A DNA stretch of 64,000 nt from Macrostomum lignano (Eukaryota). A model generated the notes under the pieces. That model was not told the DNA's origin. It searched no databases and worked only from the letters and a program-made list of their open reading frames with translations. The stretch spans positions 248,001 through 312,000 of the forward strand of contig NIVC01000841.1 of NCBI GenBank assembly GCA_002269645.1, written 5' to 3'. Within the stretch, counting starts at the first letter, position 1. The number at the start of each line of letters is the position of its first letter. The position numbers were made by a program, and so were the translations under genes. Of this stretch, positions 8,249-64,000 are shown piece by piece.

Positions 8249-11200
8249 ATGGGCGACCCACAGCGAGGGTCCCAACAAGCAGCAGCCCAACAGTCAAGCA
8301 GAGATACAGCCAACAGAATGAGTATCAACATATCGCCACCGCAGCCGTTTCTGCCAGCCGCTGGAGCAAAGCCGATTGAATGGAACCGATGGAAAGCAAT
8401 GTTCAGCAATTACCTGCTAGCATCGGGAGCTATCGATCTGCCGGAGCAAAGAAAACAAGCGTTGCTCATTCACTGCTTGGGTGCAGAAGGTCAAAGCATC
8501 TACATGTCTCTGCAGGCCTGCCGCAATCAGGAGGAAGGAGAGCATCCGCCAGCAACAGTCGATGACACGCTGAAGCTCCTGGATACGCACTTCGAACCCA
8601 AGGTCAACGTAGTTGCTGAGAGGCACAGATTCCGACAGAGAGCTCAGCGACCGGGTGAGAAGATCAGCGACTTCGTTGCCGCGCTACGAAACCTGGCTTC
8701 GAACTGCGACTTCAAGACCTTCCAGGAGGAGATGCTGCGTGACCAGCTCGTCGATAAAGTGCTCAGCAACCACATCAGGGAGCGACTGCTTATGGAGTCG
8801 GAGCTGACCTTGGCGACAGCAGTGCAGTTGGCGGTGCGACTGGAAACTGGACTGCTGGAGGCCCAGGCCATCAAGGGAGGCAGCCACGCAGACCCAAGCA
8901 GCTCGTGTGGAGTCCCGCAGATCAGCAAGGCCAAGAACAGTGGAGCGGCGGCAAGACAGCACGAGGCACTGAAGCCGGCAACCGACGGCCGGAGTTGCAG
9001 CTACTGTGGCTCAGCAGCGCATTTCGGTGGACAGACCTGCCCAGCGAAGGGGCAGAAGTGCAAGTCCTGCGGTAAGCGTGGGCACTTCGCCAGAGTCTGC
9101 AGGAGCGGCAATCGAGTGCGACAGCTTCAGGATGAGAACTCCATCTGCACTGTGTCGACAGCTGCGGCAGCAAGCAAGCAATGCGAAGTGCTGTTGAACG
9201 AGAGGCCTGTCAAGCTGCTCGTTGACTCCGGTTCGCGAGTCTCCATCATCACCAAGACGACGTACAACAGACTTCTGTCCAACGTGCCCCTGGAGGCGTC
9301 ATCACGGAAGCTGGTCGCTTTTAACGGCAGCAAGATCTGCGTGCTTGGTGACATCCTGACCTCGGTGCAGCTCAAGGACAAGGTAGTGCCTTACGTCAAC
9401 TTTAGCGTGGTCAATACCGGATCTGACATCCTGGGGTGCGACCTCATGGATCAGCTGGGACTGAGGATCGTCACTGCAGACGGTGAGCGAGTGCAGACAG
9501 TCGGCACGAGAGCCCTGCCAGACTGGATCCCAGGCCGATTCGACCTGTTGACTCAGGGACTCGGACACATCAAAGGATTTCAGCACAGGCCGCGAGTCAA
9601 CCCCGCGGTGCAACCGACTGCTCAACCGTTGCGCAGGGTGCCGCTCAGCCTAAGAGATTCGGTTCAAAAGGAGATCGACCAGCTGCTGCAGCAAGGCATC
9701 ATCGAGGAGGTCGACGCCTCAGACTGGGTGCCAAACCTAGTCGTGGTGCCAAAGGCGAACGGATCGATCCGGACCTGCAATGACCTGAGAGGCCCAAACA
9801 AGAGCATCATACCGGACAGATACCCACTTCCGACGTTTGAGGAGCTCTCCACCGAGTTCACCGGGTCGCGATGCTTTTCCAAGTTAGACCTGAATTCATC
9901 TTATCTGCAACTGGATTTGGCCGAGGACTGCAGAAATCTGACGACGTTCGTGACGGAGCGAGGCCTATATCGGTATCGGAGGGTGTGCTTCGCCCTGAGT
10001 AGTGCACCGGCTGCGTTCCAGTAGGTGATGGCTAAGATCCTCAGTGGCATCAAAGGCGCAGTGCACTTTATTGAAAACATCGTTGTTCACGCGGCATCAA
10101 GAGAAGAGCACGACAAGCGCCTGTTCAAGTGCTGCAAACTCTGATGACGTACAACGTGACTATCAATACGGCCAAGTGCACCTGGCGCCAGGACAAGGTC
10201 AACTTCCTAGGCTATGAACTGAGCGCTTCTGGAGTCCGCCCGTTGCAGTCACACATCGAAGCTATCGAGAAGTTACAGCCGCCAACGAACACCAAGGAAG
10301 TGGCTGCGTTTCTAGGCGTCGTGAAGTACTTCGGCAACTTCATTCCCAGACTCTCCAGAACGGCGGAGCCCCGCATGAAACTGCTGAGGAAGGACGAGCC
10401 GTGGAAGTGGACGAGTGAGTGCCAGCAGGCTTTTGAGCAGCTGAAGGCAGGAGTGTGCAAGCCACCTTGCCTCAAGTTTTTTGACGCAGATCAGCCGATC
10501 ATTGTCGGCTGCAACAGCTCAGCATCAGCTCTCGGTGCGATGCTTCTTCAGGAAGACTCCGACGGCCAGTGGCGCCCGATTGCCTTTGCTAGCCAGACTC
10601 TGAGTGCTACGGAGCGCCACTACTCAGCGAGCGAGAGGGAAGCCCTGGCCTGCATCTTCGCCTGCGAGCGTTGGAACTTCTTCTACGGCCGACGGTTCGA
10701 GCTCCACACCGATCACCAGGCTCTCACCACGCTGCTGTCAGCATCTGGGAACGGGCACCGGCCACTCAGACTGCACCGCTGGGCCGATCGTCTGTTGAAC
10801 TACTCCTTCACCGTCAAGTACGTCCCGGGTGCCAAGAACATCGTGCCCGACTTTCTGTCGCGCTGCCAGGACACGGCCGAGCCGACGGAAGGCGATGCAA
10901 CTGATTATCTGGAAGTCCAGAGAGTGCTCCTGGCGGAGGCGCTGACCGTGGTCACCGAGGACGAACTGGCCGAGGCAACTTCAAAATCCGAGCTCCTGGC
11001 CCGAGTCGCTGAGTTCACAGTTGCCGGTTGGCAAGAAATGCAAGAAAAAGCTCAATGAGCGCCTGCTGCCCCTTCTGGAGTGTCAGGAACGAACCGACTG
11101 TCTGGAGCAACGGCAGGTGCTTGGCCATGGGAACTCGCGCCGTTATACCGGAAGAACTGCGTCAGCGAGTGCTCGACTTAGCGCATAAAGGTCACAAGGG

Positions 11201-12039
11201 AGTCAGCAGGACCAAGCATCACTGCCGAGACACCGCGTGATGGCGCAAAATGGAAAGCGACATCGAGAGGTTCGTCAGCAGCTGTTCTGCGTGCATCCTC
11301 AGTGAAGAGCTTCAAGCCGCATCGGGCAGTGCTGACCCCGACCGAGTGGCCCAAGGAACCCTGGACAGAATTGCAGATCGACTTGTTTGGAGAGCTGCAC
11401 GAGGGTGCACCACAGAACTGCCGCTTCATACTCGGTGTACACGACCTGCATTCAAAGTGGCTGCAGTGCAGTCTGATGGAAGCGGTGCAGTCCATCTTGT
11501 GGGCGCACCGATCGACACCGCACGCGCTAACCGGCATGACGCCAGTGGAGCTAATGCTTAATGGTCGCAAGATCACCTCGCCGCTGTGGACGCTGCAGCC
11601 GAGGCGAGCGACTCGAGAACACCCACTGGCCGATCAGATCCAGGAGCGGCGAAGACGGCAATTCAACCGGCTCAACAGATCCCGGCAGCCTCCGCGCCGA
11701 TTCCGGGTCGGCGACCTGGTGCAAGTGCGGTCTCCGCGGATGCGAGGCAAGCTGCAGAGCCACGTGTCACCACCTCTGCGAGTCAGCGACATCATCAGCC
11801 CGACGATCGTCTGGTTAGAGGATGACTCAAGGTGGCACACCAGCGTCTGTATGCCTCATGCGGAGCCCGAGGGTGCCAGAACGACTTCGGCAACGGCAAT
11901 GCCGCCACAGCCGCCAGTGGCTGCGGAGCCGGCAGCGCCAGAAGGCCCGACGGACCCGCCGCCGGCGACCGCTGTACTGCGGCGCAGTATACGACTGCGG
12001 GCACCGCCGTTGTGGTACGGCCAGGTCGTGACGCACTGA
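8249..12039 (+). pseudogene. Gypsy element 1 gag-pol (gag with CCHC knuckle, protease, RT, RNase H, integrase), disrupted
   Basis: CKSCGKRGHFARVC, LLVDSGS, RCFSKLDL, IAFAS, FELHTDH, AHKGHKG; stops at 10022, 11056 and 11238, frameshift near 10130, integrase core missing. Confidence 0.92.
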
Positions 12040-35965: not shown

Positions 35966-36419
35966 TTTGTTGCCTTTTTTGAACCTTGGGATTCTTTTAT
36001 TTAACATGAAAAACAATTGGAGACGGGACTTTAAGTAACTGAGCGTTTTTCCAAGGTAGGTAGAGAAGGAAAAGGTAACAAAGGGTAGGTAATAATGCAC
36101 ACAACCCGAAAGTTGGACCTCGGATAAGGGAGAACAAGCAAGGGGATAATTAGGGACTCTACTTTATGAGCTTAAGTTGACATAATATCCCAATTATCCC
36201 TTGCTTGTTCTCCGTTAGATTTAAGGTTAAAAATGTAAGTAATGATACTCCACTATATTCTTCCATTCGTCAGTATTCGAGCTACTATCCAAGCAAAATT
36301 AAATAAGCAACAACAAAACCAAATTATGCCACTGTGCACACTGAGCAATAAGATGTATTTATACTTGAACTGAACTTTTTCAAAAGAATTTTGTTGCTCC
36401 AATGAAGAAGAAGAAAGGT

Positions 36420-42248: not shown

Positions 42249-42810
42249 TTGCATTGGCGCCAACTGACTGCGCACTTGTGTCCAATAGGCCGCAGAAACT
42301 ATTTGCAGGCGTGGACGAAAAAATCGGCCTGGACACTGACGAGAAGCTGCTGCTAACGACAGAACTGCAGCCAGAGCTACTGTCGGCACCCAGAGTCGAC
42401 TTCATCAAAGCTAAGAGACGGCTGTACATCACCAGCTGCGAGTGTCGAGACGCGGCACCGCTAACTAAATCAACTCCTTCGCTAACATTATTGACATTGG
42501 CAACGCGAAGCGACACTAATATAGCTAGCGTCGCTTCTGGATCGTTGCTAGGCAGAGCGGTTGCCTTAGTAACGCCATATAAAAGCCATTCTAATAGGCT
42601 TGCCCGCCCAGGCTCGTCGCCTGAGAACAGCAGACGATCGTAAAAAGTTGATAACGTTCTATTCTTGTCCGCCGACGAATTGACACTGGCGCAAGGACTC
42701 GTACCGGACACTAATGGACAACGAAGCTGGTGCAGATCTGCTATGACTGAGCGACGGAGGGCTTCTGTGCTGGCGAAGCTGTGCGTCATATGGCTGCTGC
42801 ACTGAAACAT
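42249..42810 (-). CDS. HAUS7: HAUS7-like exon 1 (start at ATG 42810 or 42789)
   Basis: DLHQLRCPLVSG, RASLLEWLL and DLVSGAASRHSQL resemble recalled HAUS7 segments (KLKDLNCPFLEG, RLEILEWM, ELLKGCACAQKQL); donor A/gttagt. Confidence 0.7.
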
Positions 42811-43301
42811 ATCGATATGGATGATTGAAACTTAACTTTCTGATGCTAACCTTCCCCTATAAGTGTCCCTTTGCTCTTGACTAGAAATTGAACTGACACT
42901 GATATTTCTACCGATAAGTTACAATGACCGAGACAATCAAAAAGCAAATATAACATTGTAAATTTACGAGTCTATTATTGCGCGTGACTAAAAACTTAAC
43001 ATATTTTTTTATTTCATTGTTCTCTTACTTTTCTATTATTTCTACTGTTAGTAGAGTAGAAGAACTACTAAAGTAGTAATATTCTTCTGCTTTAACTGTA
43101 AGTAAAGTACTCGTTCAAGAAAGATGCTAGATATTGTAGTTGTATATTACATTTACGTACTAGCCATGAAACCGAAATCTTGTACAAAACCAGATGTTAA
43201 ATGTTATTTAGATTTGTTTATTTAATAAAAGAATCAAAGCACAAGTTTTCATGTTGATTCTCTTTTTTAATAGACTAATCACTAAAAGTCAAACAGTATG
43301 T

Positions 43302-43832
43302 TTACTGTGCAGACAGAACATTGGCGCTAAACAGCTGATATAGTAGACCCATGACGGCATCAACAAAACAGACCGGGGCCAATAGTGAGTTACTATAATA
43401 GGCCACTGAGCAATAGGCACTAGCGGTGATGGTAGACAGTAGAAGTGCAGCAACGCAACTACCAATAACGAGGTACTGCGTCACGCTATCGCATCTTGGA
43501 CTCTCTGAGATCCACTGACGCTCTCTAGCCAAGGCCAAGCCGCATACAACAAATAGAGCAATTAGACAAGCAAACGTTAGTAAAGCCGTGATCTTTACTG
43601 CAACATTTGGCACGCTGAATAGGCCGACTGTGCGAGAGACCGCATCAGCGCTACCATCTTTACTAACAATCCACCAGTGCTTTAGGCACACGCTGAGCAG
43701 GCACAGGAAGGACAATACGATACTACTAGCAAACTTGTACACGGACAATCCTGCTCTAAACGGCCGAGCCGTATTAGTAGCTGATGCGCGGCTAATACAA
43801 TCAACGGACACGGTAGCATAACCATTAGCCAT
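43302..43832 (-). CDS. Multi-pass membrane protein B, 176 aa (claudin/PMP22-like topology)
   Basis: ATG in ACCATGG context; about four hydrophobic stretches, TM1 followed by HWW. Confidence 0.55.
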   Translation of the reverse strand: MANGYATVSVDCISRASATNTARPFRAGLSVYKFASSIVLSFLCLLSVCLKHWWIVSKDGSADAVSRTVGLFSVPNVAVKITALLTFACLIALFVVCGLALARERQWISESPRCDSVTQYLVIGSCVAALLLSTITASAYCSVAYYSNSLLAPVCFVDAVMGLLYQLFSANVLSAQ

Positions 43833-44152
43833 GGTGAAGCTAAGCCAACTAGGCTACTGCTGAACACTAGCATAGCAAGGGTGTAAAATATTGCGCAAGC
43901 TCCCGTAGTAAACATTGCAACGCTACGAACAGCTTCGGTAACAAACACGGCCAGTAGTAAAACCAATAGATTAGCAATGGCTAGCAGCATGGCTATGAAT
44001 ATAGTAGACATAATCACTGCAACACTGGCGCTAACAATGCTAGCATAGAATGCCGGATGCCAATAGTCAGTGAACGCGGCGACAATTGAAAATATGAATA
44101 GTTTTGTTGCCAGAACTATACTGATAGCGTCGTAATAGCCAGTGAAAGCCAT
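43682..44152 (-). CDS. Multi-pass membrane protein A, 156 aa (claudin/PMP22-like topology)
   Basis: ATG in GCCATGG context; TM1 followed by TDYW; several hydrophobic stretches; overlaps ORF B by 151 nt. Confidence 0.55.
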   Translation of the reverse strand: MAFTGYYDAISIVLATKLFIFSIVAAFTDYWHPAFYASIVSASVAVIMSTIFIAMLLAIANLLVLLLAVFVTEAVRSVAMFTTGACAIFYTLAMLVFSSSLVGLASPWLMVMLPCPLIVLAAHQLLIRLGRLEQDCPCTSLLVVSYCPSCACSACA

Positions 44153-45006
44153 GGCGATTTAGTCAGACAAATTATTTATTAAACTTGGCACCTTCTCGAG
44201 ATTTTCTAAGTCAGCCACCAAACTTACTGACCATTTGTACCCGAGCTAACATTTCGGCCATAGACAAAAGTCAGCAACTAAAATTAGATTGCTCTGTTAT
44301 TAATAATTTTTGCTCACGTAACGGTAATGCTACTGATGGTAAGCAAGTCTTCATAGTTTGAGGCAATATTAAACCTGGAAAAGTAATATAAACTTCTACA
44401 TTACGCACTACTTGTCTCTAAAGTGGATTTTTAATGAGTAAGAACAAAGAGACGATATTTTGCTCAAACCACAAATTCTAAAATAACTAGATGGGCCACT
44501 CAGGCATATATACTTAGTAGTACAGCTTCCTATACTTTCATTTCAGTAGCAAAGAAGAATACAGAGGCTATTTTATAAAAATAAAGTCAGCTGAACTGAC
44601 TTTGATAAGTTTAGAAGGCCAAGCTTGCAGGCGTAAACAATTTGCTAATTGGTTCAGCAATAATGTACATTAGCCACTAAAATGTACATGGCAGCTTTAG
44701 GCTGGAATTCCGAGAAAGGCAATAAAAATTGAGGCGGGACGAGGGGGTAGTGTGGAAAGGCGCGGTGGTAGGGTTTAAGCTAGGGGGAAGAGCCAATAAA
44801 TGAGCCTTGGCTTTAAAAATACATTAAAATGCTTCTGTTCAACTTACTACTGAACTGAAAGTAGCTTACACGCAAATGTGCTGCGTGGCCCATCTTATTA
44901 TTCTCGTATCTATTGGTCAAAAACTGAGCACTTTTTACAAACGGTTGTGCTACTAATTTATTGCTAGCACACAAATTATCAAACATTTCTCTGCAGTCAG
45001 ATAAAA

Positions 45007-45606
45007 TCAGCTAGCTCTAAACAGTTTACGAAACAACGGTCGATGCTGGATAAATACAGTCTCAGTTAACAGACTAAACTTGATTGGTCCGCCAGGCTTT
45101 TTAATAGTAAATTTAACATGCCTGTGGCCAATATCTGAGATGGCTAGGCTAGACACCGGAGCGATAACAGGCTTCTTAAACAGCATGCTTAGTGGAATAA
45201 CTGTCACCGTAGCCCCATCGGGGCTAAGCAACACACTACGAACCACGCGTTTCGGCGCAATCAGACTGCGATGAGCAAAATAAGCAGATGCTGGCAGTAC
45301 AATTGTCAGACTAATAGTGCACATCCAACTTAACAGTTCGTTTCGTTTGCCTTTGTACAGCTGGTAGTAAGCCAACAGACCGCTGCTACTGCTAGCAATG
45401 ATGATACCGCTGGCTGCTAATCCAGCATAGAGTTGTTGAAATCTGCGCAGCCGACTACGTACTGGCACATTGTAAACTAGAATCTCTGAGCCATCTTTCA
45501 GGGCTTGAGTCTGCGACTGAGCAGTTGCAAAGCTTCTACCTAGGAGGCGGCCAATGCCAACAAGTTGACAATGGCAGAATCCGCAGGTTTTCGACAGAAT
45601 CTGCTG
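45007..45606 (-). CDS. TMEM223: TMEM223-like mitochondrial inner-membrane protein; no in-frame ATG before the first TM
   Basis: RVVRSVLLSPDGATVTV and KFSLL...PLF resemble the TMEM223 family; frame open from acceptor tttacag; presequence-like GRLLGRSFAT; AATAAA at 44962-44957. Confidence 0.65.
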   Translation of the reverse strand, partial: QQILSKTCGFCHCQLVGIGRLLGRSFATAQSQTQALKDGSEILVYNVPVRSRLRRFQQLYAGLAASGIIIASSSSGLLAYYQLYKGKRNELLSWMCTISLTIVLPASAYFAHRSLIAPKRVVRSVLLSPDGATVTVIPLSMLFKKPVIAPVSSLAISDIGHRHVKFTIKKPGGPIKFSLLTETVFIQHRPLFRKLFRAS

Positions 45607-45819
45607 CTGTAAAGATTAAAGAAATTTTGTTATTTAAACTATGCACTAATTTCCTACTGCAAGTAGGCTATTAAGCTAATGGGCTAATTTTAGTCCATTT
45701 ACAGTGAATATTGGGAAACTTCCAAGATGATTGCTAAAGATTACTAAAGCTAATAATTTTGAAGCCTTTAATGAAACTAAATCATTAAATTCTGATACTA
45801 ATATTTATTTTGATAAGGA

Positions 45820-47147
45820 CAGTGTTGGGAAAATTACTTTGAAAGAGTAACTTCTGGTTTTGTAACTTCCAGTTCCAAGGAAAGTAACTTCTGGCACTTG
45901 TTTCAGTACCATTACTTTTTGTAAAAAGTAACTTCCAGTACTTCCATTACTGGTCCTTTCTAATTTTAATGAACTGCCAATTAAAAAGTGCTCAAACATG
46001 TCTTTATGAAAAAAAACAAAAAGTATGTATTGGTCTAGAGTTAAACAAACTGTTATTCCTCAAATAAAGATGCTACATAATATTATTTATTACTCGTATC
46101 ATTGCATACAAAATTTGAGTGAAAAAAACCTTTACAAAACAAGAATTAGTACTATCTGATATATCAGGAGGCTACACTTGCAATTTGTAGAAAAAAATTT
46201 TGGAGGCCAATTTTCAAGTGTTGATTCTGACTCTTCTGAAGTACTATATGGAGATAATTTTTGTCAAATAGGTGTGTGTGTTGCAATAAGTAGAATAGTT
46301 TAGAGGAATTTTAGTTTGTGTGGGTCATTCTAGTTGCCCTACTAGTATTGTGCTATAATTTTATAGCAGCTATACTTTTACAGTAGTGTAAATATACTTT
46401 TGTACAACTGACTCATTTAAAATCAATGATAATCTTTTAGCAGCCTTGGAAATTCCAGTTAACAATTAAGAGAAAAGATACAAGGACAACAAATAGCTGG
46501 AATTTTATAGATGGACCAATGCACAAGACTTTAAATAACTTGATTTAGTGCCATACGCTAGCTGCAATTAGAAAATTATAATTAGCCTCAAAAGAGTTAA
46601 AAGTCAAAACACTTAGAATGCATCACTCATGTTGTCCTGCATGAATATCAAAATTAAGAAATTGGCCTTCAAAAATTTTCTACAAATCAGGATTGTAGTG
46701 TCTTGATGTACTGCTAGTTATCCTTGTAAGAAAACTTGCAAGGTGTTATTAAAGGATGTTTTATTGTTCTGAAAGTTTCTTGTTTTAGCATTAGTAGTTA
46801 CCAATTATTACTTTAATTCTATGATTCTATAATGCTTAATGCCTTAACTTAAAAAGTAAAAACTGCATGATCTAGAATAATCTCTTTTTTACCTTTTCAT
46901 ACTTACCTGTACTATAAGTATTTTGGTAAAACTTTGGTGAAACTTTGGGGAAATATTTTAGTGCTAAATTGGCTGTTTGGTACCTAAAATTTCATTTTTA
47001 AGTACCGGAGGACTGGACTTATCAAAAAGTAACTTCCATTACCCAAGTCAAGCATTCTGAAAAAAAGAACTGGAAAAAACTACCACTTTAAAAAAGTATC
47101 TTCTGGTATTAAAAGTGCCAGAAGTGCTAGGATTTTGCCCAACACTA
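45820..47147. mobile_element. Non-autonomous hAT-type DNA transposon, 1328 bp
   Basis: TIR CAGTGTTGGG / CCCAACACTA; 8-bp TSD GATAAGGA at 45812-45819 and 47148-47155; subterminal AAGTAACTTC repeats. Confidence 0.85.
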
Positions 47148-48759: not shown

Positions 48760-49850
48760 TCCCTTGGATCCTTTAAAATTTCTATCGTCTCTTTGTTTCC
48801 TCTCATCTCTCTCATCCCTCGTCTCTCCTCTCTCCCCTCTTCTCTTGTATCTTCCCTCATCTCTCTTCTCTTTCATCTCTCTTATCTCATCTCTTGTCTC
48901 TTCTTTTCTCTCTCCTCTCTCCCCCTCTCCTCTCTCCTCTCACCCCCTTTTCTCTCTTATCTTCCTTCTCCTTTCTATTATTTTCTCTCTTCTCTTAACT
49001 CTCTCCTCTACTCTCTCATCTCTCCCCTCTTCTCTCGTCTCTTCCCTCACCTCTTTTCTCTCTCGTCTTTGCTCTCCCATCTTTCCTTTCTCTTCTTTTA
49101 TCTTTTCTCTCTTATCTCTTCTCATTTCTCTCTGCTCCCTCTCTCTCTCTCTCTTCTCTGTTATCTCTCCTCTTTTCTCTACTCTCTCCCCTCTCCATTC
49201 TCCTCTTTCCTCTCCTCTCTCCTCACTCACTTCTCTACCTTTGTCTCTCCTCTCTCCTCTCGTCTCTGTAACCTCTCCTCTGTTCTCTCTACTCTCCCAT
49301 CTTTCATCTGTTCACTCTCGTCTCTGCTCTCTCATCTCCCTCTTTAATCTGGCATCTCTGTCTTATATGTTCTCTCACCTCTCTCCTCTGTACTCTTTTC
49401 TTTCCCCTCTTTTGACTCCTCACTTTTCTTTCTCCTTTTTTCTTTTCTCTTCTCTTCCCTTTTCTATACTCTGTCTCCCTCTCTTCTCTCACTCCACTTT
49501 GCTCTCTCCATTATCTCTCATCTCTCCTTCCACCTCTCTCATCTCTACAACCTTAGAGATGTAGAGATGTATCTTTAATCTCTTCTCTCTTCCCTTTACT
49601 CTCTCATCTCTTCTTTCACCTGTTTCCTCTCTGCTCTCCTCTCTGCTGTCTCCTCTCTCCTCTCATCTGCAGCTTTCTGCTCTCTCATCTCTACTCTCTC
49701 CTCTCGCTTTTCCTCTATCCCCTCTTCTCCCCTTCTCTCTCATTGTCCTCACCCCCTCATCTCTCCTATTATCTTTTATCTTTTCTTTTATCCCCTCTGT
49801 TGCCTCTCCTCTCTTCGAATCGTCTATTCCTTCTTCTTTCCACTTTCATC
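48760..49850. repeat. CT-rich low-complexity polypyrimidine tract
   Basis: Direct reading; S/L-rich and R/E-rich ORFs are artefacts. Confidence 0.9.
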
Positions 49851-50639
49851 TGCCCCTCAGCTATGAGCTGGATTCTTTATCTGGCCTTTGAGGTAAAAGT
49901 CTACCCATCCCTGCTTGGAAAGCCAGTTTGTGGGACATAGTACTCTCATGGTTGTTCTCATGCTTTGATCATGTTATCTTTCTTGCCAATTTGCAGCCCT
50001 AAAAGGAATTTGTATATCTTCAGCTCCACTGCAGTCTGCATCAGTCTAACAACCAAGGAAATATGCATTTCTTAGGAGGCCATTTAATATTTACACAGTA
50101 CCTTTAAAAGAACCCTAAAATTTTCATGGTGTGCCTAATTTAGTAGGGTTGTATTGCATTGCATCTCATCGCCTTTTCATAAATGTTTTGCTTTAACAAA
50201 CCATGCTGGATTCCCTCGATTTGCCAATTGCCATCCACTGTTAAACTGCTGCAGAGTTTGCCAATACAGAGGGGAGGGCAGTGGTTAAAATTTCTCACTG
50301 AACTGTCATGGCTAAATGTAGCCTCTCCACTCTCGGGGTGCGAGATTGCGAGAAGGCTATAAATAAAGTTATTCCAAAACACTGTACATTTGCTATGTAT
50401 ATTCAGTCTTATTTATACATAGTGCTTCTTTTCTTTTTTACATGACTTTTCTTCTATCAGTGCCCCCGTGGTGGGCCAACAAAGAATGTAATAAAAAATT
50501 GAGTAAAGTACATGTACTTTGAAGTAGTTTCTGACTTTTGCTTTGACATCTCAGAAACCCCCCCCCCATAATCTCAGTTATTCTCCGTAAGCCTTGACAT
50601 CTCAGTAAGTCTCCCCAGCACAGCACAATAGCTTCATTT

Positions 50640-51410
50640 AATTTTTACATGACACTTCTTTCATGTCTGACATGACGCTTCATTTGATTTTTACATGACG
50701 CTTCTTTTATTCTTCCATGACGCTTCTATGATTTTTCAAATGACACTTCCATTACTTTTATATAAGGCTTACATTATTGCTTACATGACTTTTCTATGAT
50801 TTTTTACATGACGCTTCTATGATTGTTTACATGACGCTTCTATGATTTTTTATATGACGCTTCTATGATTTTTTACATGATGCTTCTATGATTTTTTACA
50901 TGACGCTTCCATGATTGTTTACATGACCCTTCTATGATTTTTTATATGACGCTTCTATGATTTTTTACATGATGCTTCTATGATTTTTTACATGATGCTT
51001 CTATGATTGTTTACATGACGCTTCTATGATATTTTACATGATGCTACTATGATATTTTACATGACGCTTCTATGATTTTTACAAGACGCTTCTATGATTG
51101 TTTACATGATGCTTCTAGGATTGTTTACATGACGCTTCTATGATATTTTACATGATGCTACTATGATATTTTACATGACGCTTCTATGATTTTTACAAGA
51201 CGCTTCTATGATTGTTTATATGACGCTTCTATGATTGTTTACATGACGCTTCTATGATTGTTTATATGACGCTTCTATGATCTTTTACATGACGCTTCTA
51301 TGATATTTTACATGACGCTTCTATGATTTTTACAAGACGCTTCTATGATTGTTTACATGACGCTTCTATGATTGTTTACATGACACTTCTATGATTGTTT
51401 ACATGACGCC
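50640..51410. repeat. 23-bp minisatellite (TTTACATGACGCTTCTATGATTG), ~30 copies
   Basis: CATGAC at 51356 and 51379. Confidence 0.95.
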
Positions 51411-56692: not shown

Positions 56693-57638
56693 TGTCAGCC
56701 GTTCCCTCGCCCTCCCTTTGGGTTGCTGTCTGCCGCTGGTCAGCTTCCCGCCCTCCTTTCGCTTGCCTGTTGCCCCCGTGTCCTTTCCGCCCTGTTGCGT
56801 TTCCGTTCTCAGCCCTCAGTCTCTCGACTGTGGGCTGTCTCTGTTTCGCTCCCGTCCCGTTTTCCCTGTCTTGTGAGCAAGTCACATGACAGTTCTTGCG
56901 TTCTTTGAGTCTTAAAGTGCAGTAAACATGTTTACTGCACTCGTTGGCCCTGTTTACCGGGTGAGTCACGTGCTTTCGGACCCTTCCCTTCTCTAAGGAG
57001 AGGAGTGACTCATGTTGCTAAAAATAGCAACTGAGTCACAGCCGCGTGTACTCTGGCCGGGGACCTCAAGTGACGTCAGTTCTAAAAATAGAACAAGTCA
57101 CGAGGTCTTCCGCGCGCTTGTACCCTGCCCAAGACTCTCGAGTGACGTCAGTTCTAAAAATAGAACAAGTCACGAGGTCTGGAGCGTGGGAATTTCCCGG
57201 CTATAAATAGGAGCCCTCTCCCCCTTGTTTCCGTCAAGGAGTCTTCCTTCTGTTCAACCTCGAGTTCTACGTCCGCGTGTGACTAAGTCCCGAGTGTCCG
57301 AGTCTTTGCGCACATTGATTCTGTTCCTATTGCTCCGACTGAGACCCGACCAAACCAATCCAAGTCTACGAGAGGCTAACTCAGCCCTCCCTGTACCATC
57401 CAAGCCCGGCAGGTGCTGCTGACGAGACGCCTTATACGTTGAGCTGCAAATCTGCACGTCGTGCTGTGTTCGTTGACTTCATTATTTCGTTCCGACGGGA
57501 AGCTCACCTCACCGAAGGCCGAGACCTGAAGGAACTGGTGGCAGCACTACCTACGCTACTAAAGTTAAGAAGGCTTCTAAGTGAGAGGACGGAGCCCAAG
57601 TCACTGCGCTGTACAGCAGGACAACCACAGGTACAACA
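56693..57638 (+). mobile_element. Putative 5' LTR (~950 bp) of Gypsy element 3
   Basis: TGTCAG start, ACAACA end, followed by PBS-like TGGTGACGC at 57640; TATA-like TATAAATA near 57202; 3' LTR outside window so left edge unconfirmed. Confidence 0.65.
56916..57210 (+). promoter_or_regulatory. LTR U3 motif cluster: Forkhead, AP-1, E-box, MEF2, CRE, NF-kB-like sites and TATA box
   Basis: Exact consensus matches: TGTTTAC/GTAAACA x3, TGA(C/G)TCA x3, CTAAAAATAG x3, TGACGTCA x2, GGGAATTTCC, CACGTG. Confidence 0.6.
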
Positions 57639-58906
57639 CTGGTGACGCAGCGGTGAGATCCGACTACGACACACCCAAGCCAACCGCTCTTTCGAGAACG
57701 ACATCGGCCAGCGACTACGACGAGTTCAACATGTTCAACGAGCGAGACGAGAGCCGGTGCAGCAGCCGGCTGGATCAGCACATCAGCAGTTCGAGGCCTG
57801 CGGCAGCAGAAGCCGCCGCAGCAGCAGCAGCGATCAACGACTTTGGTCAGCAGCCAACGCCGAGGCAAGGTGCGAGAAGCGACGTGTCCGACGACCCGCC
57901 AGACGAGCTTCTGCAAGGCCTGGACAACATCGGCCGGAACATCACGCACCAGGACGAGAGGACCATGATGGCAGCTCTGCAGCAGCAGATGGAGCGGCCT
58001 GTGAGTAAACAAGTTAAGATTGTGAAGTATACTCCAAGTCAGGACATTCATGTCTGGCTTGCCGCGTTCGAGCAGCGTTGCGAGATGGAGCGCATCGTCG
58101 ACCCGTTCGAGATGAAGCAACACCTCATTGCGAGTCTTGATTTGGCTACTGCATATCCTTCTTTGCTTAGTATGAATCTCCCGCGTTTCGCCAGCTACGA
58201 GGAGGTCAAGCAGCGTCTGATTGAGCGATTTGCCCGTCATGGTGGTGCTGATGAGTATAGAGAGCTGTTTAGGCGTCGTCAACAAGGCAAGAATGAGTCA
58301 GCAGAAGAGTTCGCTGACGCCCTGAGAACTCTGGGTGAACGTGCATATCCTCGAATGCATCCTGAAGACCGCGAGAAGGAGATTACTGATCAATTTCTTG
58401 CTGGTATCCGGACGACTCCAGATCTGCGCGAACGGCTGTACTGGGTTCGCCCGAACAATCTTCTTGCTGCGATTCGAGAGCTACGACGACTAGAAGGCGC
58501 CAAAGAATTGGCGCACCGATCTGCTCAACCCCCGGTTAGGATGTTGGACGGGGAGGAGGACGGCGACCCGAAACCCGACGTCACCGCCCAAGCCTTACTG
58601 ACTCTAACCGACTTGATTGAGAAGCAGCAGCGAATGCTGGATCACCTGGTGCAGCGTGACCAACAGCAGGTAGCCAGCCCGCCAAAGAGAGCTATAATCT
58701 GCTATAGCTGCGGACAGCCCGGTCATCGCAACACCCAGTGCCCGACGCGCCAGAACCAGGGAAACGGCCAGGCGGAGAGCGACAACGGCACCGCCCTCCG
58801 CGAGGTCCAAGCCCAGGCTACTTGGCAGACTCCGAGAGGTCACCAGAAGAAGAGGATGTCGGCTGTGCAGGCGCCAATGCCCAGTCCGACAGTCGCTCGT
58901 CAGTAA
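57581..58906 (+). CDS. Gypsy element 3 gag with CCHC zinc knuckle
   Basis: WLAAFEQRCE, RRRQQGKNESAEEFADAL, CYSCGQPGHRNTQC; true start uncertain. Confidence 0.88.
   Translation: MRGRSPSHCAVQQDNHRYNTGDAAVRSDYDTPKPTALSRTTSASDYDEFNMFNERDESRCSSRLDQHISSSRPAAAEAAAAAAAINDFGQQPTPRQGARSDVSDDPPDELLQGLDNIGRNITHQDERTMMAALQQQMERPVSKQVKIVKYTPSQDIHVWLAAFEQRCEMERIVDPFEMKQHLIASLDLATAYPSLLSMNLPRFASYEEVKQRLIERFARHGGADEYRELFRRRQQGKNESAEEFADALRTLGERAYPRMHPEDREKEITDQFLAGIRTTPDLRERLYWVRPNNLLAAIRELRRLEGAKELAHRSAQPPVRMLDGEEDGDPKPDVTAQALLTLTDLIEKQQRMLDHLVQRDQQQVASPPKRAIICYSCGQPGHRNTQCPTRQNQGNGQAESDNGTALREVQAQATWQTPRGHQKKRMSAVQAPMPSPTVARQ
58759..58765 (+). other. -1 ribosomal frameshift slippery site G GGA AAC (gag to pol)
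   Basis: In gag frame just after the knuckle; the -1 frame is open into the protease (LLDSGS). Confidence 0.75.
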
Positions 58907-61900
58907 GTGACGCGGAGTGCGGAGGTTTCGTGGACACCTCCCCGAATCAAAAAATCCATGCGCGTGAGGCCGATCCGTACGTCACAGGTCGAGTTGCGAG
59001 TCGAGAGGTCCCTTTCTTGCTAGACAGCGGCAGCCGGAAAAACTTTCTTGGTTCGTCAACCTGGGCCGCTATTAGACGTCGGATGCCTCGTTGTATTATA
59101 TTGCATGCTAATCCCGATTGCGTAACTATGTATGATGGGACGCAGCTCCCACTTGCTTGTAAGGTGACCATCCCGTGGAGTTTGGTGATGTCGTCGCGGA
59201 CACCGAATTCCTCGTCACGGTCTCCGATTGTGAAAATTTGCTTGGCGTATCGTTTATGCGAGAGCACTGCCAGAACTTGGACTTCGCTCAAGGAATGCTA
59301 ACGTTCAACAATGGCACGTGTATCCCTGTTCGTTATTCGCGTCGTGAGCTTCAAACCTGCCGAGTGTACACCTCCGAGAAGTGCACCCTGCCGCCTAGAA
59401 GTTCAGCGCTGCTTCCCGTCAGATTGGATGACGGCCATTCCGAGAATCGAGGATCGCCATCAATTGTCGAGCTGGTTAAGTCGAGGCTGCATCCCAGCTG
59501 CAACGCTCTGGAAGCAGCGCCTGCTCTGATGACGATGCCTGAAGGTCGCGGCTACATTGAGGTCGTCAACACCGCCGACAGCGAGGTGTTCCTGCAAGCC
59601 GGTATCCGTGTTGGTGTTGCGACGCCACTCCGAACTGCCGACCTGATGTACTTGAGCGAGACGCCCGAACCTGAAGTGCGACACCTCCCGAAGAACTCTG
59701 AAGAGTCCAGCACAGCATGGCTAGATGAAGTCGAGATCAACAGCGAATTGTCCAAAGAACAACATCAGCGAGTGCGAGATCTACTAGTTGAATGTCAAGC
59801 GGCCTTCTCCAAGCACCTGCTAGACGCCGGCCTGACTCACCTGGTGACCCACGAGATCATCTTGAAGGACCGACACCAGTTGCGCTACCACCACGCCGAA
59901 TCCCGCCTCATCTGAAGGACAAGCTCGACGCCTGCTAGACGAGATGCTGGCGAAGCACATCATTCGCCCTGCCTACTCGAGCTACAATTCGCCAATGCTC
60001 ATCGTGCCCAAGAAGGACGGCAACATCCGACTAGTCCACGACTTCAGAGCTCTCAACGACAGGTGTGTGTATCACCCGTATCCGCTCCCGCACATCCAGG
60101 AAACCTTCGCGAAGCTTCGTGGTGCTCAGTGGTATTCTAGCTTGGACCTTGCTCAAGGATTCTGGCAATCCCGCTGCGCGACTGCGACCAGCACTTGACG
60201 GCATTCTCAGTGATCGACCGCGGCCAATTCTGTTTTAACGTTCTACCGATGGGTCTCCACGATAGTCCCGGCAGCTTTCAGCGTTGCATCAATAAGCTCC
60301 TGGACGGCCTGACGCCAAAGACTGCGCTTGGCTACATGGACGACATCGTGGTGCACTCAGTGACTTTCGAGGAACAGCTGGATAACTTGCGAACTGTACT
60401 CCAGCGCATCATCGCAGCCAAACTCAAAGTGAAACCGAAGAAGTGTCATTTGTTCCTCAAGGAGCTGCATTATTTAGGTCACGTCGTGACTCCCGACGGC
60501 CTGAAGACCTGTGAGGACAAGATTGCGCAGATCCGTGATTGGCCCGTGCCACAGTCCGTTACTCAACTGAGACAATTCCTAGGCCTCGCCAATTACTACC
60601 ACAAGTTTGTCGACGGCTACGCTGGAGTGGCTGCGCCGCTGCATGCCCTGACGCGAAAGGACATTGGCAGCCTGCGGCAGCATTGGACTCCCGAGCATCA
60701 GTTAGCGTTCGACACTTTGAAGAAGAAATTGTGTTCTACTGAAGTTCTCGCTCTGCCTGAATTTAATTCTGATCCTGCTGTGAAGTTTGTCCTCGACACG
60801 GATGCCTCTGATATTCGAATAGGCGCTTGCCTTGGACAACTGCAATCCGACGGCGTCGAACGTCCAATTGCATTCTTTAGCCGTAAACTTCGCGATCCTG
60901 AGAAGCGCTACACGGTCACGAAAAAGAGCTGCTTGCAATTGTGGACGCTATGCGACATTTCCGTCATTATTTAATTGGCAAGAAGTTTGAAGTTCGATCC
61001 GATCATCGGGCCTTACTGTGGTTACTGAACCAGACTCAGGCCACAGGTATTTTAGGCCGCTGGATCGAACGCCTAAGCGAGTTCCGCTTCCAGCTCAACC
61101 ACCGCAAAGGCAAGGACCACGCCAACGCTGATGCCCTGTCAAGAAGACCGGAGGCGCCGCCGATCTCCTGCGAGCATGGCCGACTGCTAGAGCAACCTGG
61201 TTCTGCAGCCCGACCCGGTGACAACCACGACCTGGAACCGGATTCGGACCTGACACCCGAGGCCACTGCCAGAGCAGCCCTCCAGAAGACAGTCCAATCT
61301 CGCTGCTTGGAGGCCGAGACTGACCTGGACGAAGACCTGGAAGCCACCGCGCCAGCAGCCTTCCAACACGACGCCCACCGCTGCAGTCAACGCCTGGAGA
61401 CCGGCCTGGACGACAACTCAGAGGCCACTGCGACAACAGCCCTCTGCCGCGATGCCCATGCCGCCCGCTGCAATTTGGAGACCAACCTGGACGAAGACCT
61501 TGAGGCCACTGTGGACACAGACCTCCTTGACGACGCCCAAGACTACAGGTCTCGGACTCTGGAGACGCCCCCGGACCAAGATTCAAAGGCCACCGCACCA
61601 GCAGCCCTTCTGATGACGGCCCGCAACGCAACTCCAGGCAAGCAATTTAACTACAACCCTTCCGAGCCTTTCGCTGGGATTTCTCGCCGTGTTGACAGAG
61701 GCCAGAATCTCGCGCCAGCTGCAAGGTCGAAGCTCTGTCCCCCGGGCCGACAGACAGCTGCTCATCGCCTGTGCGGAAAGTCGAGTCCCCCTTTGCGACA
61801 CCGCCCAGTGCAGGAGAAGACTCACCCAATTTTGACGACGACTGAGCCGACGGCTACGGCTGCCTGCGACGAAGCGTGCTTCACGTGTTGCGTCCCGCCC

Positions 61901-64000
61901 TACAGCCAAGAGTCGCCTGTGCTATGCAGTGGAGGCATGCGCGCTGCTCCATCTGCGGATTTTTCTGTCTGAGAGCGATGAAGAGAACTTCGAATCGAGA
62001 TCAACGGACGTACGCCGACGTTGTGAGACAAAGTCCCTCGGAGCGACCTAATCCTGACGCCGACAAGACGGTGCCGTGTGATCGACCTGGAGCCATTAAA
62101 GCGGAGACTGCGGGAATCCGGACCCCTCAGCCATGCCGCGCTGTGCTCACTGATTTTCTGAAGCTGCCGATGACTCGCCAACAGTTCGTTGAAGCCCAGC
62201 GCGCTGATCGAGCCATCAGCTACGTGCTCAACTTGGTCGAGAACGAAGCCCGAAGCCTGAGTTCGACGCCCGGTTGCGACTGAAGAAGGAGCAGCGGAAC
62301 CTGCTCGGATACTACGAGAACCTGCAGGAGGACAACGGCCTGCTGCTGATTGACCTGTCCGATGGCCAGCAGCCGCCAAAGGTTGTTCTGCCTGAGGCCC
62401 TTGACGCCCAGGTGCTCCAGGAGCTCCACAGTTCGCCACTGTGTGGACACCTCGGCGAGACGAAGACGTTACTGCGGCTACGAGAACGGTTCTGGAGACC
62501 CGGATTAGCCCGTGCTACCAAGACCTTCATCAGTAAGTGCCGCACTTGCCTTGAAAGTAAATCGCGACGGCGAGAGAGAGTTCCGGTCCAGAGCTTCCCA
62601 GTTTGCGAAGTTCTGGGTAGAATCCACTGTGATGTAGTAGGACCAATCGCGCAGAAGAGCAAGAGCGGCAACCGCTACATCCTGACCTTGTGCGATGCGA
62701 CGTCGAAGTATCCATTCGCCTACCCGATGAGAAACCAGAAAGCCAAAACAGTCATCAAGCTTCTGCAGGAGCGCTTCATCCCCGAGTTCGGTGTACCATG
62801 CTGGATTCACACCGATCAAGGCACCAACTTCACCGGCTCCGCCTTCAAGAAGTTCTGCGACCTGTTTGGCATTCGGCATACGACAACAACACCGTACAAT
62901 CCAGCTTCCAACGGACAAGTCGAGAACCTCAACAAACAGCTGAAGAGTGTCCTCACCTGTCTGCTCGAGCGCAACCATAACGACTGGGACACCTTCCTCC
63001 CAGCTTGTCTGATGGCTCTCCGTTCCAGCGTGCACCCGGTGACAGGTTTCACGCCTCACTACCTGGTGTTCGGCCGTGACTTCCGACTTCCGATCGACAA
63101 CTCGCTAAAGAAGCTGCCCGAGTATGCCAACCTGCCCGACTATGTCAAGGACTTCCAACGTCGCCTGGACGAGGCGACTGAGCTAGCCAAGGAGCGCCTG
63201 CATCTGCATCAGCAACTGCGAGACGAGCACTACTCGAACCTGCCCGTCGCCAAGAAGCTCCAACCCGGCGATCTGGTCTTCCTCAACAACCCGGTACTCG
63301 AACCGGATGAGGCGGCGAAGTTTCATCGACCTCGCAAAGCCCTATACGAAGTCGTCGAGCCCAAGGGCGAGGTCGTCTACAAGATTCGACGGAGACTGCC
63401 CAACCCGAGAGCCAGACGAGACGAACTAATCGTCCATCGCCGGAACCTCCTACTCGTGCCTGACGCCGATTACACGAGGACTTCCGATCCTGAAGTCGAC
63501 AAACCGAAGAAGCGTCGGCGACCGCCCGACGTCCCCGACGGCGCAGGACCCGCGACCCTGACGCCGATTCCCGAGGACGACCAGGACGACCCCGACGACG
63601 ATGATGATAACGGCTACGACGCAAGGCCGGCCTTCCGATGGCACTTCCGGCCTTTGGCGATCCCGGAGGTGCAGCCAGGAGGTGGACCGGTCACGACACC
63701 AGCGAACCAGGCAAGTGCACTTCGGCGTGAGCCAGTGCCGTATGGTGAATGTCATTTGCATGAGCCTGTTCTTGATGCGTCTACGCCTGTTGTTTCTTTT
63801 CCGCCCGTTTCTGCTCCCGCCCCCAGTGCTGCTTTTTCTGTGGTCCAGACCCCTGGGCCGTCGCTATGCACCACTCCGGTGGAAGCGTCATTAGGAACTG
63901 TAGATGCCGGTAGGCCGGCTAGGAACCGTAGGCAGCCTGAGAGGCTGATTATTAATCCTAGGGCTAAAACTTACGTTAGCCGCACCGCCCGCATCCGCGC
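58760..64000 (+). pseudogene. Gypsy element 3 pol (PR, dUTPase-like fold, RT, RNase H, repeat linker, integrase), multiply frameshifted, runs off window
   Basis: LLDSGS, WYSSLDL, YMDDI, DTDAS, SDHRAL, HSSPLCGH, CDVVGP, TDQGTNF, NGQVENLN; frame breaks near 59175, 59890, 60190, 60930 and at the RNase H/integrase linker. Confidence 0.9.

What the first reader, a model, noticed from the sequence alone, without database searches (positions are those of the whole stretch)
45007..45620. TMEM223-like ORF lacks a start codon and begins in frame at a splice acceptor: candidate spliced-leader-donated AUG
Seen: the minus-strand frame is closed by TAA at 45618-45616, followed by a pyrimidine-rich tttacag acceptor and two more in-frame CAG. 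It then reads QQILSKTCGF...GRLLGRSFAT, and the first in-frame ATG lies beyond the first TM segment. Known: flatworm spliced leaders end in AUG, which can serve as initiator Met; TMEM223 proteins are about 200 aa. Inference: SL-AUG plus this exon gives a 200-aa protein with a presequence-like N-terminus, so the gene may depend on trans-splicing for its start codon.
Basis: partly seen in the sequence, partly recalled or inferred. Interest (0 to 1): 0.7.

Follow-up and report, generated by a model that had tools for sequence, protein, structure and literature searches.

The report
Flatworm gene borrowing its start codon
A small single-exon gene of the flatworm Macrostomum lignano, probably a TMEM223-type mitochondrial protein, has no usable start codon of its own and most likely takes its AUG from the trans-spliced leader RNA, a mechanism already shown in other flatworms.

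Summary
On the minus strand a TAA (45618-45616) closes the frame. A pyrimidine-rich tract then leads into CAGCAGCAG (45609-45601), and the ORF runs from there to TGA (45009-45007). The first in-frame genomic ATG is at 45324, after the first hydrophobic span and behind three out-of-frame ATGs.

The window is Macrostomum lignano (Mlig_3_7, NIVC01000841.1). Its single 35-nt spliced leader ends in ...TTGCATG, and its trans-splice acceptor motif [T/C]TNCAG matches TTACAG here. All three AGs put the SL AUG in frame, giving 198-200 aa.

The ATG-less 5' part behaves as coding sequence:
- It has 0 stops in 93 codons, against 5 and 4 in the other frames.
- Codon usage favours this frame.
- GC steps from 0.30 to 0.50 exactly at the acceptor.
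- It has no substitutions against a second genomic copy whose flanks differ by about 2%.

Both GenBank gene models start within 0-3 nt of the third AG, and the second copy's entry is named "partial".

The TMEM223 label is only weakly supported: Pfam PF06979 scores below threshold, and a shuffle test gives P of about 0.005. No RNA data were available, so trans-splicing at this site is inferred. The mechanism is established (Cheng et al. 2006), so this is a new example of a known kind.

The parts
45616..45618 (-). In-frame TAA that closes the reading frame upstream of the acceptor
45607..45624 (-). Pyrimidine-rich tract plus first 3' splice acceptor (tttctttaatcTTTACAG). TTACAG fits the M. lignano SL trans-splice acceptor motif [T/C]TNCAG
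   Evidence: motif from PMC8629364
45601..45609 (-). Three tandem CAG acceptors 3 nt apart (AGs end at 45607, 45604 and 45601). An exon start at 45606, 45603 or 45600 is in frame with the ORF in each case
   Evidence: The paralog's GenBank CDS starts at the ATT that corresponds to 45600
45007..45600 (-). Single coding exon: 197 codons (ILSKTCGF...KLFRAS) plus TGA at 45009-45007. With the SL-encoded Met it gives a 198-aa protein
45493..45600 (-). N-terminal 36 codons with no acidic residue and 4 Arg/Lys. They include an amphipathic stretch IGRLLGRSFAT (hydrophobic moment 0.66) and an RSF|A match to the R-3 cleavage pattern. Presequence-like by simple rules only
45370..45426 (-). First hydrophobic span (residues 60-78, Kyte-Doolittle 1.51), wholly upstream of the first genomic in-frame ATG. 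It aligns with TM1 of vertebrate TMEM223
45280..45336 (-). Second hydrophobic span (residues 90-108). It is followed by the RS...VRSVLLSPDGATVTV motif, the best match to TMEM223
45322..45324 (-). First in-frame ATG present in the genome (residue 94, inside TM2). It would give only 105 aa lacking TM1
45426..45494 (-). Three out-of-frame ATGs (45494 in the strong context AAAGATGG, 45470 and 45428). A scanning ribosome would meet them before the in-frame ATG at 45324
44957..44962 (-). AATAAA poly(A) signal about 45 nt after the stop codon. The gene is therefore compact, with one exon of about 0.66 kb

Best explanation
This is a single-exon nuclear gene of Macrostomum lignano (exon about 45600-44940, minus strand). 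It encodes a roughly 198-aa two-span membrane protein of the TMEM70/TMEM186/TMEM223 type, most like TMEM223, an inner-mitochondrial-membrane factor for early COX1 assembly.

The pre-mRNA is transcribed from the AT-rich upstream region. The outron is removed by spliced-leader trans-splicing at the TTTACAG/CAG/CAG acceptor cluster. The 35-nt SL (CGGTCTCTTACTGCGAAGACTCAATTTATTGCATG) is joined so that its terminal AUG becomes codon 1, in frame with ILSKTCGF... If an upstream AG is used, the N-terminus is instead M-Q-ILSK or M-QQ-ILSK.

Without the SL the message has no AUG for the full-length protein.

- **Shown:** the anatomy, the frame relationships, the coding character of the ATG-less part, the organism and its SL, and the position of the annotated 5' ends.
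- **Inferred:** that trans-splicing happens at this site, that the ribosome starts at the SL AUG, and that the protein goes to mitochondria.
For: 1. **Organism and leader.** The window lies in M. lignano contig NIVC01000841.1. The species has one SL, ending in ATG and followed by GTAAG in the SL RNA gene. About 30-39% of its genes are trans-spliced, and the acceptor motif is [T/C]TNCAG (PMC8629364; PMC5730564).
2. **Local anatomy.** There is an upstream TAA, then a pyrimidine tract, then TTACAG|CAG|CAG, and no in-frame ATG for 93 codons.
3. **Frame.** A model mRNA made of the SL plus the exon has the SL AUG as its first AUG for all three AGs, opening a 198-200-aa ORF. The next three AUGs are out of frame, with ORFs of 3-17 aa. 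The in-frame genomic ATG is only the fifth AUG.
4. **The ATG-less part is coding.** The frame is open (shuffle P = 0.0068) and codon usage favours it by +16.8 bits against -17.4 and -13.5. GC steps up at 45601/45600.
5. **Second copy.** The copy on NIVC01000306.1 has 3 differences in 594 CDS positions, all at third codon positions, with no indels and none in the first 497 nt. The flanks differ by about 2% and carry indels. Fisher P = 0.0095, and P(0 differences in 279 nt) = 0.004.
6. **Annotation.** The Mlig_3_7 gene models come from RNA-seq, and their boundaries were set at mapped SL sites where such data existed (PMC5730564). The paralog's product (PAA85733.1, BOX15_Mlig017677g1) is named 'partial' and starts at ILSK. 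The window copy's product starts at LSK (its GenBank name is hidden by the tool). Both start 0-3 nt from the third AG and have no upstream exon.
7. **Family resemblance needs the upstream part.** Pfam PF06979 matches residues 70-177 (E = 0.0075). A collinear alignment with vertebrate TMEM223 shows 20-28% identity and places the conserved pre-TM1 motif and TM1 upstream of the first ATG.
8. **Precedent.** The SL AUG serves as initiator Met in S. mansoni and is needed by more than 40 cDNAs there (Cheng et al. 2006, as cited in PMC9851317). The same is reported for E. granulosus (PMC3510090). [quoted passage not shown]
Against: - No RNA evidence could be examined. No SL-exon junction read, cDNA or peptide was seen.
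- Exact look-ups of M+ILSK..., M+QILSK... and M+QQILSK... found nothing in the protein collection.
- Whether the annotated 5' end here came from an SL peak or from the end of read coverage cannot be told from the record. Neighbouring models also begin with non-Met codons, simply because the ORF caller extends ORFs to the transcript end.
- The motif favours the first AG, while the annotation favours the third.
- By position in the published SL, the SL AUG has U at -3, a weak Kozak context.
- Family assignment is below threshold, and similarity of the N-terminal half to TMEM223 is not significant on its own (shuffle P of about 0.05).
- The two genomic copies may be very recent duplicates, so the conservation argument rests on small counts.
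Confidence: 0.7

Rival explanations
1. A cis-spliced upstream exon that the annotation missed carries the real ATG. The CAG cluster is then an ordinary intron acceptor.
For: Acceptors for cis- and trans-splicing look alike, and parasitic flatworms share sites between the two (PMC12582326). In the 10 kb upstream there are two phase-0 ATG...GTRAG mini-exons (donors at window 47890, 'MIILE', and 49050).
Against: - Both candidates are what chance would give. One lies inside GA/CT low-complexity repeat, and neither is identical in the second copy.
- RNA-seq-derived gene models of both copies stop at the acceptor and carry no upstream exon.
- The upstream region is AT-rich (GC 0.23-0.33) with frequent stops and negative codon scores.
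Confidence: 0.1
2. Translation starts inside the exon. It begins either at the first genomic in-frame ATG (45324), giving a 105-aa protein without TM1, or at a near-cognate codon such as CTG at 45597. The SL AUG is irrelevant or absent.
For: An in-frame ATG exists at 45324, and CTG at 45597 happens to be the first codon of the window copy's annotated product. The SL AUG has a weak -3 base.
Against: - Three out-of-frame ATGs, one in a strong context, precede 45324.
- The 93 upstream codons behave as coding sequence and show no substitution between copies.
- A 105-aa product would lack TM1 and the pre-TM1 region that align with TMEM223.
- On a trans-spliced mRNA the in-frame SL AUG comes first. 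Efficient non-AUG starts are rare in eukaryotes (general knowledge).
Confidence: 0.1
3. It is not a working protein gene but a decaying or truncated copy, or a mis-called ORF. On this reading the missing ATG simply reflects loss of the 5' end.
For: No homologue was detected by single-sequence searches of 5.8 and 1.84 billion proteins apart from its own copy. Pfam is below threshold, and the AlphaFold single-sequence model is poor (pLDDT 52.7).
Against: - The 197-codon ORF is intact in both copies.
- The only differences are at third positions, with no indels, while the flanks carry 2% substitutions and many indels.
- Codon usage is positive and a canonical AATAAA lies 45 nt after the stop.
- The gene is in a transcript-based annotation.
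- The resemblance to TMEM223 is collinear over the full length, at the right length and topology.
Confidence: 0.07

Closest known systems
[quoted passage not shown]
   Same: The SL ends in AUG and the acceptor sits at the very start of the coding exon. The SL AUG is in frame, and no other AUG can give the full-length conserved protein.
   Different: The species is different: a free-living macrostomorph rather than a neodermatan parasite. Use of the SL AUG is inferred from the genome and annotation here, whereas it was shown by cDNAs and in vivo translation there.
Echinococcus granulosus SL-bearing cDNAs that need the SL AUG (PMC3510090)
   Same: These include small mitochondrial and OXPHOS-related proteins whose N-termini match orthologues only if the SL AUG is the start. 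The authors argue that the usage is phylogenetically conserved.
   Different: That work had cDNA evidence, and no TMEM223 case was seen in the passages read. The tandem CAGCAGCAG acceptor seen here was not among the features read there.
slORFs: ORFs created by SL-donated start codons in nematodes, Oikopleura and trypanosomes (slORFfinder, PMC9851317)
   Same: The concept is the same: the leader supplies the start codon.
   Different: Those cases mostly use near-cognate NUG codons and often create alternative or extended ORFs. Here a canonical AUG supplies the only plausible start of the main ORF.
Vertebrate TMEM223 (Pfam PF06979; human protein characterised in PMC8719881)
   Same: The length is about 200 aa. 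Two hydrophobic spans fall at equivalent positions and are followed by a C-terminal domain of roughly 90 aa. Shared motifs are (D/E)(V/I)L(L/V)(F/Y)...R.R.F before TM1 and RS..V(R)SV.L..G..VT after TM2.
   Different: Identity is only 20-28%. Pfam gives 16.7 bits, below the 22-bit threshold, and hhalign gives 18% probability. The loop between the spans is much shorter. TMEM70 and TMEM186 were not tested as alternatives.

Membership tests
Flatworm mRNAs that take their initiator AUG from the spliced leader | The organism has an SL whose last three bases are AUG | tested here: met
   The window is M. lignano Mlig_3_7. The published SL is CGGTCTCTTACTGCGAAGACTCAATTTATTGCATG, followed by GTAAG in the SL RNA gene (PMC8629364). 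No SL RNA gene lies in the window itself.
Flatworm mRNAs that take their initiator AUG from the spliced leader | The coding exon begins at a 3' splice acceptor of the SL type with no upstream cis exon | tested here: met
   A pyrimidine tract leads into TTACAG, which fits [T/C]TNCAG, followed by two more CAG. GC steps up at the junction. Transcript-based models of both copies begin there. Only two chance-level upstream mini-exon candidates exist.
Flatworm mRNAs that take their initiator AUG from the spliced leader | The SL AUG is in frame with the main ORF | tested here: met
   It is in frame for all three AGs, giving ORFs of 200, 199 and 198 aa.
Flatworm mRNAs that take their initiator AUG from the spliced leader | No genomic AUG can give the full-length protein | tested here: met
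   The first in-frame ATG is at codon 94, inside TM2 and behind three out-of-frame ATGs. The upstream 93 codons are coding by frame, codon usage and conservation.
Flatworm mRNAs that take their initiator AUG from the spliced leader | The SL is physically present on the mature mRNA at this site | not testable with these tools
   No RNA-seq or cDNA collection was available. Exact look-ups of the SL-AUG-initiated proteins were negative.
Flatworm mRNAs that take their initiator AUG from the spliced leader | Translation starts at the SL AUG | not testable with these tools
   This needs ribosome profiling, N-terminal proteomics or a reporter assay.
TMEM70/TMEM186/TMEM223 family (Pfam PF06979) | Score at or above the Pfam gathering threshold (22 bits) | tested here: not met
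   The score is 16.7 bits, E = 0.0075. It is the only family hit, matching residues 70-177 to profile positions 26-137 of 157. A primate-like TMEM223 sequence scores 174 bits.
TMEM70/TMEM186/TMEM223 family (Pfam PF06979) | A hairpin of two membrane spans followed by a C-terminal domain of about 90 aa, in a protein of about 200 aa | tested here: met
   Hydropathy peaks fall at residues 60-78 and 90-108. The alignment with TMEM223 is collinear.
TMEM223 subfamily | Sequence similarity to bona fide TMEM223 beyond chance | tested here: inconclusive
   hhalign against 15 vertebrate TMEM223 gives E = 0.0013 and probability 18% over TM2 plus VRSVLL..G..VT. HMM score against shuffles: 5/1000 for the full length, 2-4/1000 for the C-half and 46-49/1000 for the N-half. 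BLASTP against a recalled human TMEM223 sequence is not significant. TMEM70 and TMEM186 were not compared.
TMEM223 subfamily | Inner-mitochondrial-membrane location and a role in COX1 assembly | not testable with these tools
   Only composition rules were applied to the N-terminus. Human data are in PMC8719881.

The most novel reading that the evidence does not exclude
In this early-branching free-living flatworm, a mitochondrial assembly-factor gene depends wholly on trans-splicing for its start codon. The spliced leader is then an obligatory on-switch for translation, because an unspliced transcript cannot make the protein. SL-AUG initiation would also be older than the parasitic flatworms in which it was first shown. 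A practical corollary is that an unknown share of the M. lignano GenBank proteins labelled 'partial' are in fact complete once the SL Met is added.
Probability: 0.65. Interest if true: 0.3.

Novelty: new member of a known kind. Interest (0 to 1): 0.25.

Why it matters
The value is mainly for annotation and as a clean test case.

- **Annotation.** The gene (paralog PAA85733.1, BOX15_Mlig017677g1, 'partial') would be complete with the SL-encoded Met. The same correction may apply to other M. lignano models.
- **Test case.** M. lignano can be made transgenic, so this compact one-exon gene with three in-frame tandem acceptors is a convenient substrate. It could show directly that a flatworm SL AUG is used as initiator, and which AG is chosen.

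It does not open a new mechanism. SL-donated start codons have been known in flatworms since 2006.

Tried and rejected
- **Rfam scan of the window:** no hit, and no SL RNA gene in the window.
- **Single-sequence homology searches:** nothing beyond the gene's own second copy among 5.8 billion proteins or 1.84 billion cluster representatives. One other hit, P0003, matched only residues 33-63 and was judged spurious.
- **PDB sequence search:** nothing meaningful.
- **AlphaFold without an alignment:** pLDDT 52.7, too poor for a fold search, so none was run. A run seeded with the TMEM223 alignment was considered and rejected as circular.
- **Exact look-up of the three possible SL-AUG-initiated proteins, both alleles:** absent from the collection. 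The neighbouring 137-aa product could not be looked up either, so I could not learn from gene names whether the downstream genes share one transcriptional unit.
- **Papers not held:** Cheng et al. 2006 and Wasik et al. 2015. They are cited only through papers that quote them.
- **A second profile search to reach invertebrate TMEM223:** not run, because the 120-row output limit would again be filled with vertebrates.
- **Off-by-one explanation:** I considered that a strand-specific off-by-one in the annotation explains why one copy starts at ILSK and the other at LSK. The two neighbouring models do not start at AG acceptors, so this stays a guess.

Full report
**What is there**

Read on the minus strand, the sequence is ...aaatttc ttTAAtctttaCAGCAGCAG|ATTCTGTCGAAAACC....
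- The in-frame TAA lies at 45618-45616.
- The three CAG occupy 45609-45601.
- The frame then stays open for 197 codons (ILSKTCGF...KLFRAS) to TGA at 45009-45007.
- The first in-frame ATG in the genome is at 45324-45322.
- AATAAA sits at 44962-44957, about 45 nt after the stop.

The unit is therefore a compact one-exon gene of about 0.66 kb, bounded by a 3' splice acceptor and a poly(A) signal.

**Where the window comes from**

The exact protein is encoded on NCBI assembly GCA_002269645.1, contig NIVC01000841.1.
- Window position plus 248,000 gives the contig coordinate.
- The second copy's protein from this assembly carries the name '[Macrostomum lignano]', and Mlig_3_7 is the M. lignano assembly described in PMC5730564.
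- The second genomic copy lies on NIVC01000306.1. Its product is GenBank PAA85733.1, 'hypothetical protein BOX15_Mlig017677g1, partial'.

- The leader is followed by GTAAG in the SL RNA gene.
- About 30-39% of genes are trans-spliced.
- The motif enriched at SL acceptors is [T/C]TNCAG (PMC8629364; PMC5730564).
- The first acceptor here, TTACAG, fits that motif.

No SL RNA gene and no Rfam family is present in the window itself.

**Is the ATG-less 5' part really coding?**

Four independent lines of evidence say yes.
1. **Open frame.** Frame 1 has 0 stops in 93 codons, while the other frames have 5 and 4. Only 136 of 20000 shuffles of the same bases keep the frame open.
2. **Codon usage.** A codon-usage score trained on other coding ORFs of the window gives +16.8 bits in frame, against -17.4 and -13.5 out of frame. 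The 282 nt upstream of the TAA are negative in all frames.
3. **Composition.** GC is 0.23-0.33 in every 60-nt bin for 240 nt upstream (45840-45601) and 0.50 from 45600 on. This is a sharp edge exactly at the third AG.
4. **Conservation.** The two genomic copies differ at 3 of 594 CDS positions. All three are third codon positions (two synonymous, one K/N), there are no indels, and none falls in the first 497 nt. The 2 kb upstream differs at 39 of 1981 aligned positions and has 38 gap columns. The downstream flank is similar. Fisher P = 0.0095, and the chance of 0 changes in 279 nt at the flank rate is 0.004.

The copies may stem from the recent large-chromosome duplication of the DV1 line (PMC8629364). 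The counts are therefore small, but they all point the same way.

**What the spliced leader would do**

I joined the published SL to the exon at each of the three AGs.
- In all three cases the SL AUG is the first AUG of the mRNA, at nt 33-35. It opens the long ORF: MQQILSK... (200 aa), MQILSK... (199 aa) or MILSK... (198 aa).
- The next three AUGs are out of frame: 45494 in the strong context AAAGATGG, then 45470 and 45428. They open ORFs of 5, 17 and 3 aa.
- The in-frame genomic ATG at 45324 is only the fifth AUG. It would give 105 aa without the first membrane span.

Under ordinary scanning, the SL AUG is therefore the only sensible start for this protein.

**Indirect RNA evidence**

The Mlig_3_7 annotation was built from RNA-seq.
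- SL-containing reads were trimmed and mapped.
- Transcriptional units were cut at the resulting peaks (TBONE).
- ORFs were called by TransDecoder (PMC5730564).

The model of the second copy starts at ATT, the base after the third AG. The model of the window copy starts 3 nt further, at CTG. Neither has an upstream exon, and the second copy's entry is named partial.

This is what a 5' end created by trans-splicing would look like. I could not see the underlying reads, however. Neighbouring models also begin with non-Met codons: His at 42783 and Arg at 35986, neither directly after an AG. The 'partial' flag alone therefore proves nothing. If taken at face value, the annotation favours the third AG, while the motif favours the first. 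Because the AGs are 3 nt apart, the conclusion does not depend on the choice.

**Could an upstream exon supply the ATG?**

In the 10 kb upstream there are 18 GTRAG donors. Only two are preceded by an open phase-0 stretch that starts with ATG.
- The first has its donor at window 47890 and encodes 'MIILE'.
- The second has its donor at 49050 and lies inside a GA/CT low-complexity array.
- Neither is identical in the second copy.

This is chance level, and neither appears in the transcript-based models. It cannot be excluded without RNA data.

**What the protein is**

Single-sequence searches find nothing but its own copy.
- **Pfam.** It gives one hit, PF06979 (TMEM70/TMEM186/TMEM223), E = 0.0075 and 16.7 bits. 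This is below the 22-bit threshold. Residues 70-177 match profile positions 26-137.
- **Obtaining real TMEM223 sequences.** I used a human TMEM223 sequence recalled from memory as a lead. The database confirmed it: 98% identity to Hylobates and 97% to Pongo TMEM223, and 174 bits on PF06979. All comparisons were then made with database proteins.
- **hhalign.** Against 15 vertebrate TMEM223 it gives E = 0.0013 but only 18% probability. The match covers the second span plus RS...VRSVLL..G..VTV.
- **MAFFT.** The alignment is collinear over the whole length at 20-28% identity. It includes the (D/E)(V/I)L(L/V)(F/Y)...R.R.F motif before the first span.
- **Shuffle test.** An HMM of the vertebrate proteins scores the real ORF above all but 5 of 1000 global shuffles and 5 of 1000 window shuffles. 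The C-half reaches 2-4 of 1000. The N-half reaches only 46-49 of 1000.
- **Hydropathy.** It shows two spans at residues 60-78 and 90-108.
- **AlphaFold.** Run without an alignment it was too uncertain to use (pLDDT 52.7).

I therefore regard 'TMEM70-family, most like TMEM223' as probable but not proven.

Human TMEM223 is an inner-membrane protein with two spans and both termini in the matrix. [quoted passage not shown]

The N-terminus here has 36 residues without an acidic side chain and 4 Arg/Lys. It also has an amphipathic IGRLLGRSFAT stretch and an RSF|A match to the R-3 cleavage pattern. This is presequence-like by rule of thumb only. No trained predictor was available.

**Comparison with what is known**

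The SL 3'-terminal AUG of flatworms has been shown to serve as initiator methionine.
[quoted passage not shown] 2006, quoted in PMC9851317, and PMC12582326).
- The same was inferred for E. granulosus, including small OXPHOS-related proteins, and was argued to be conserved in Neodermata (PMC3510090).

My literature searches found no paper that lists M. lignano genes needing the SL AUG, and none that mentions this gene. The case is therefore a new member of a known kind: the same mechanism in a different species and gene, with direct proof still missing.

**Verdict**

- I put the probability that this gene takes its start codon from the SL at about 0.7.
- The remainder is shared among a missed cis exon, an internal or non-AUG start, and a non-functional copy.
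- Interest is low to moderate. It is a tidy, experimentally tractable example and an annotation fix, not a new phenomenon.

Noticed in passing
window 45847-45935 (minus strand): Four exact copies of GAAGTTAC, mostly as GGAAGTTAC or CAGAAGTTAC, lie within 90 nt, some 240-330 nt upstream of the acceptor. The window holds 7 copies in all, against 2 expected by chance. All four are kept in the second genomic copy. The GGAAGT core resembles ETS/GABP-type sites (from memory), so this could be a promoter element of the gene or part of a repeat.
   Followed up: partly
window 43302-44152 (minus strand): Two overlapping ORFs of 156 and 176 aa with several hydrophobic spans lie between the TMEM223-like gene and the next annotated gene. 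They start with ATG at 44152, have no Pfam hit, and are absent from the list of called genes. This may be an unannotated gene with an intron or frameshift, possibly a downstream member of the same transcriptional unit.
   Followed up: partly
window 42783 and 35986 (minus strand); L001 12815-19178 and 19612-20025: The two neighbouring GenBank-derived gene models also start with non-Met codons (His, Arg), although an ATG lies 2 codons upstream or 7 codons downstream. Neither start follows an AG directly. The multi-exon model is 699 aa here (with a Methyltransf_16 domain) but 468 aa in the second copy. The 5' ends and 'partial' flags in this annotation therefore need care.
   Followed up: partly
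window 8249-12039 (+) and 57581-61972 (+): Pieces of retrotransposon-type reading frames. Pfam hits are PNMA/gag, gag aspartyl protease and RVT_1 at 8249-10024, a zinc-knuckle gag at 57581-58906, and RT_RNaseH at 60941-61972.
   Followed up: no
window 48798-49767 and 50631-51409: The desert upstream of the gene holds a roughly 1-kb CT-rich low-complexity array on the plus strand. It also holds a tandem array of a 23-nt unit (about 34 copies, with higher-order periods of 46 and 114 nt).
   Followed up: no
L001 10592-12591 against L002 10595-12594 (window about 43007-45006): Downstream of the gene the two genomic copies differ by large insertions or deletions: 790 gap columns in a 2-kb comparison, although aligned bases are about 99% identical.
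   Followed up: no
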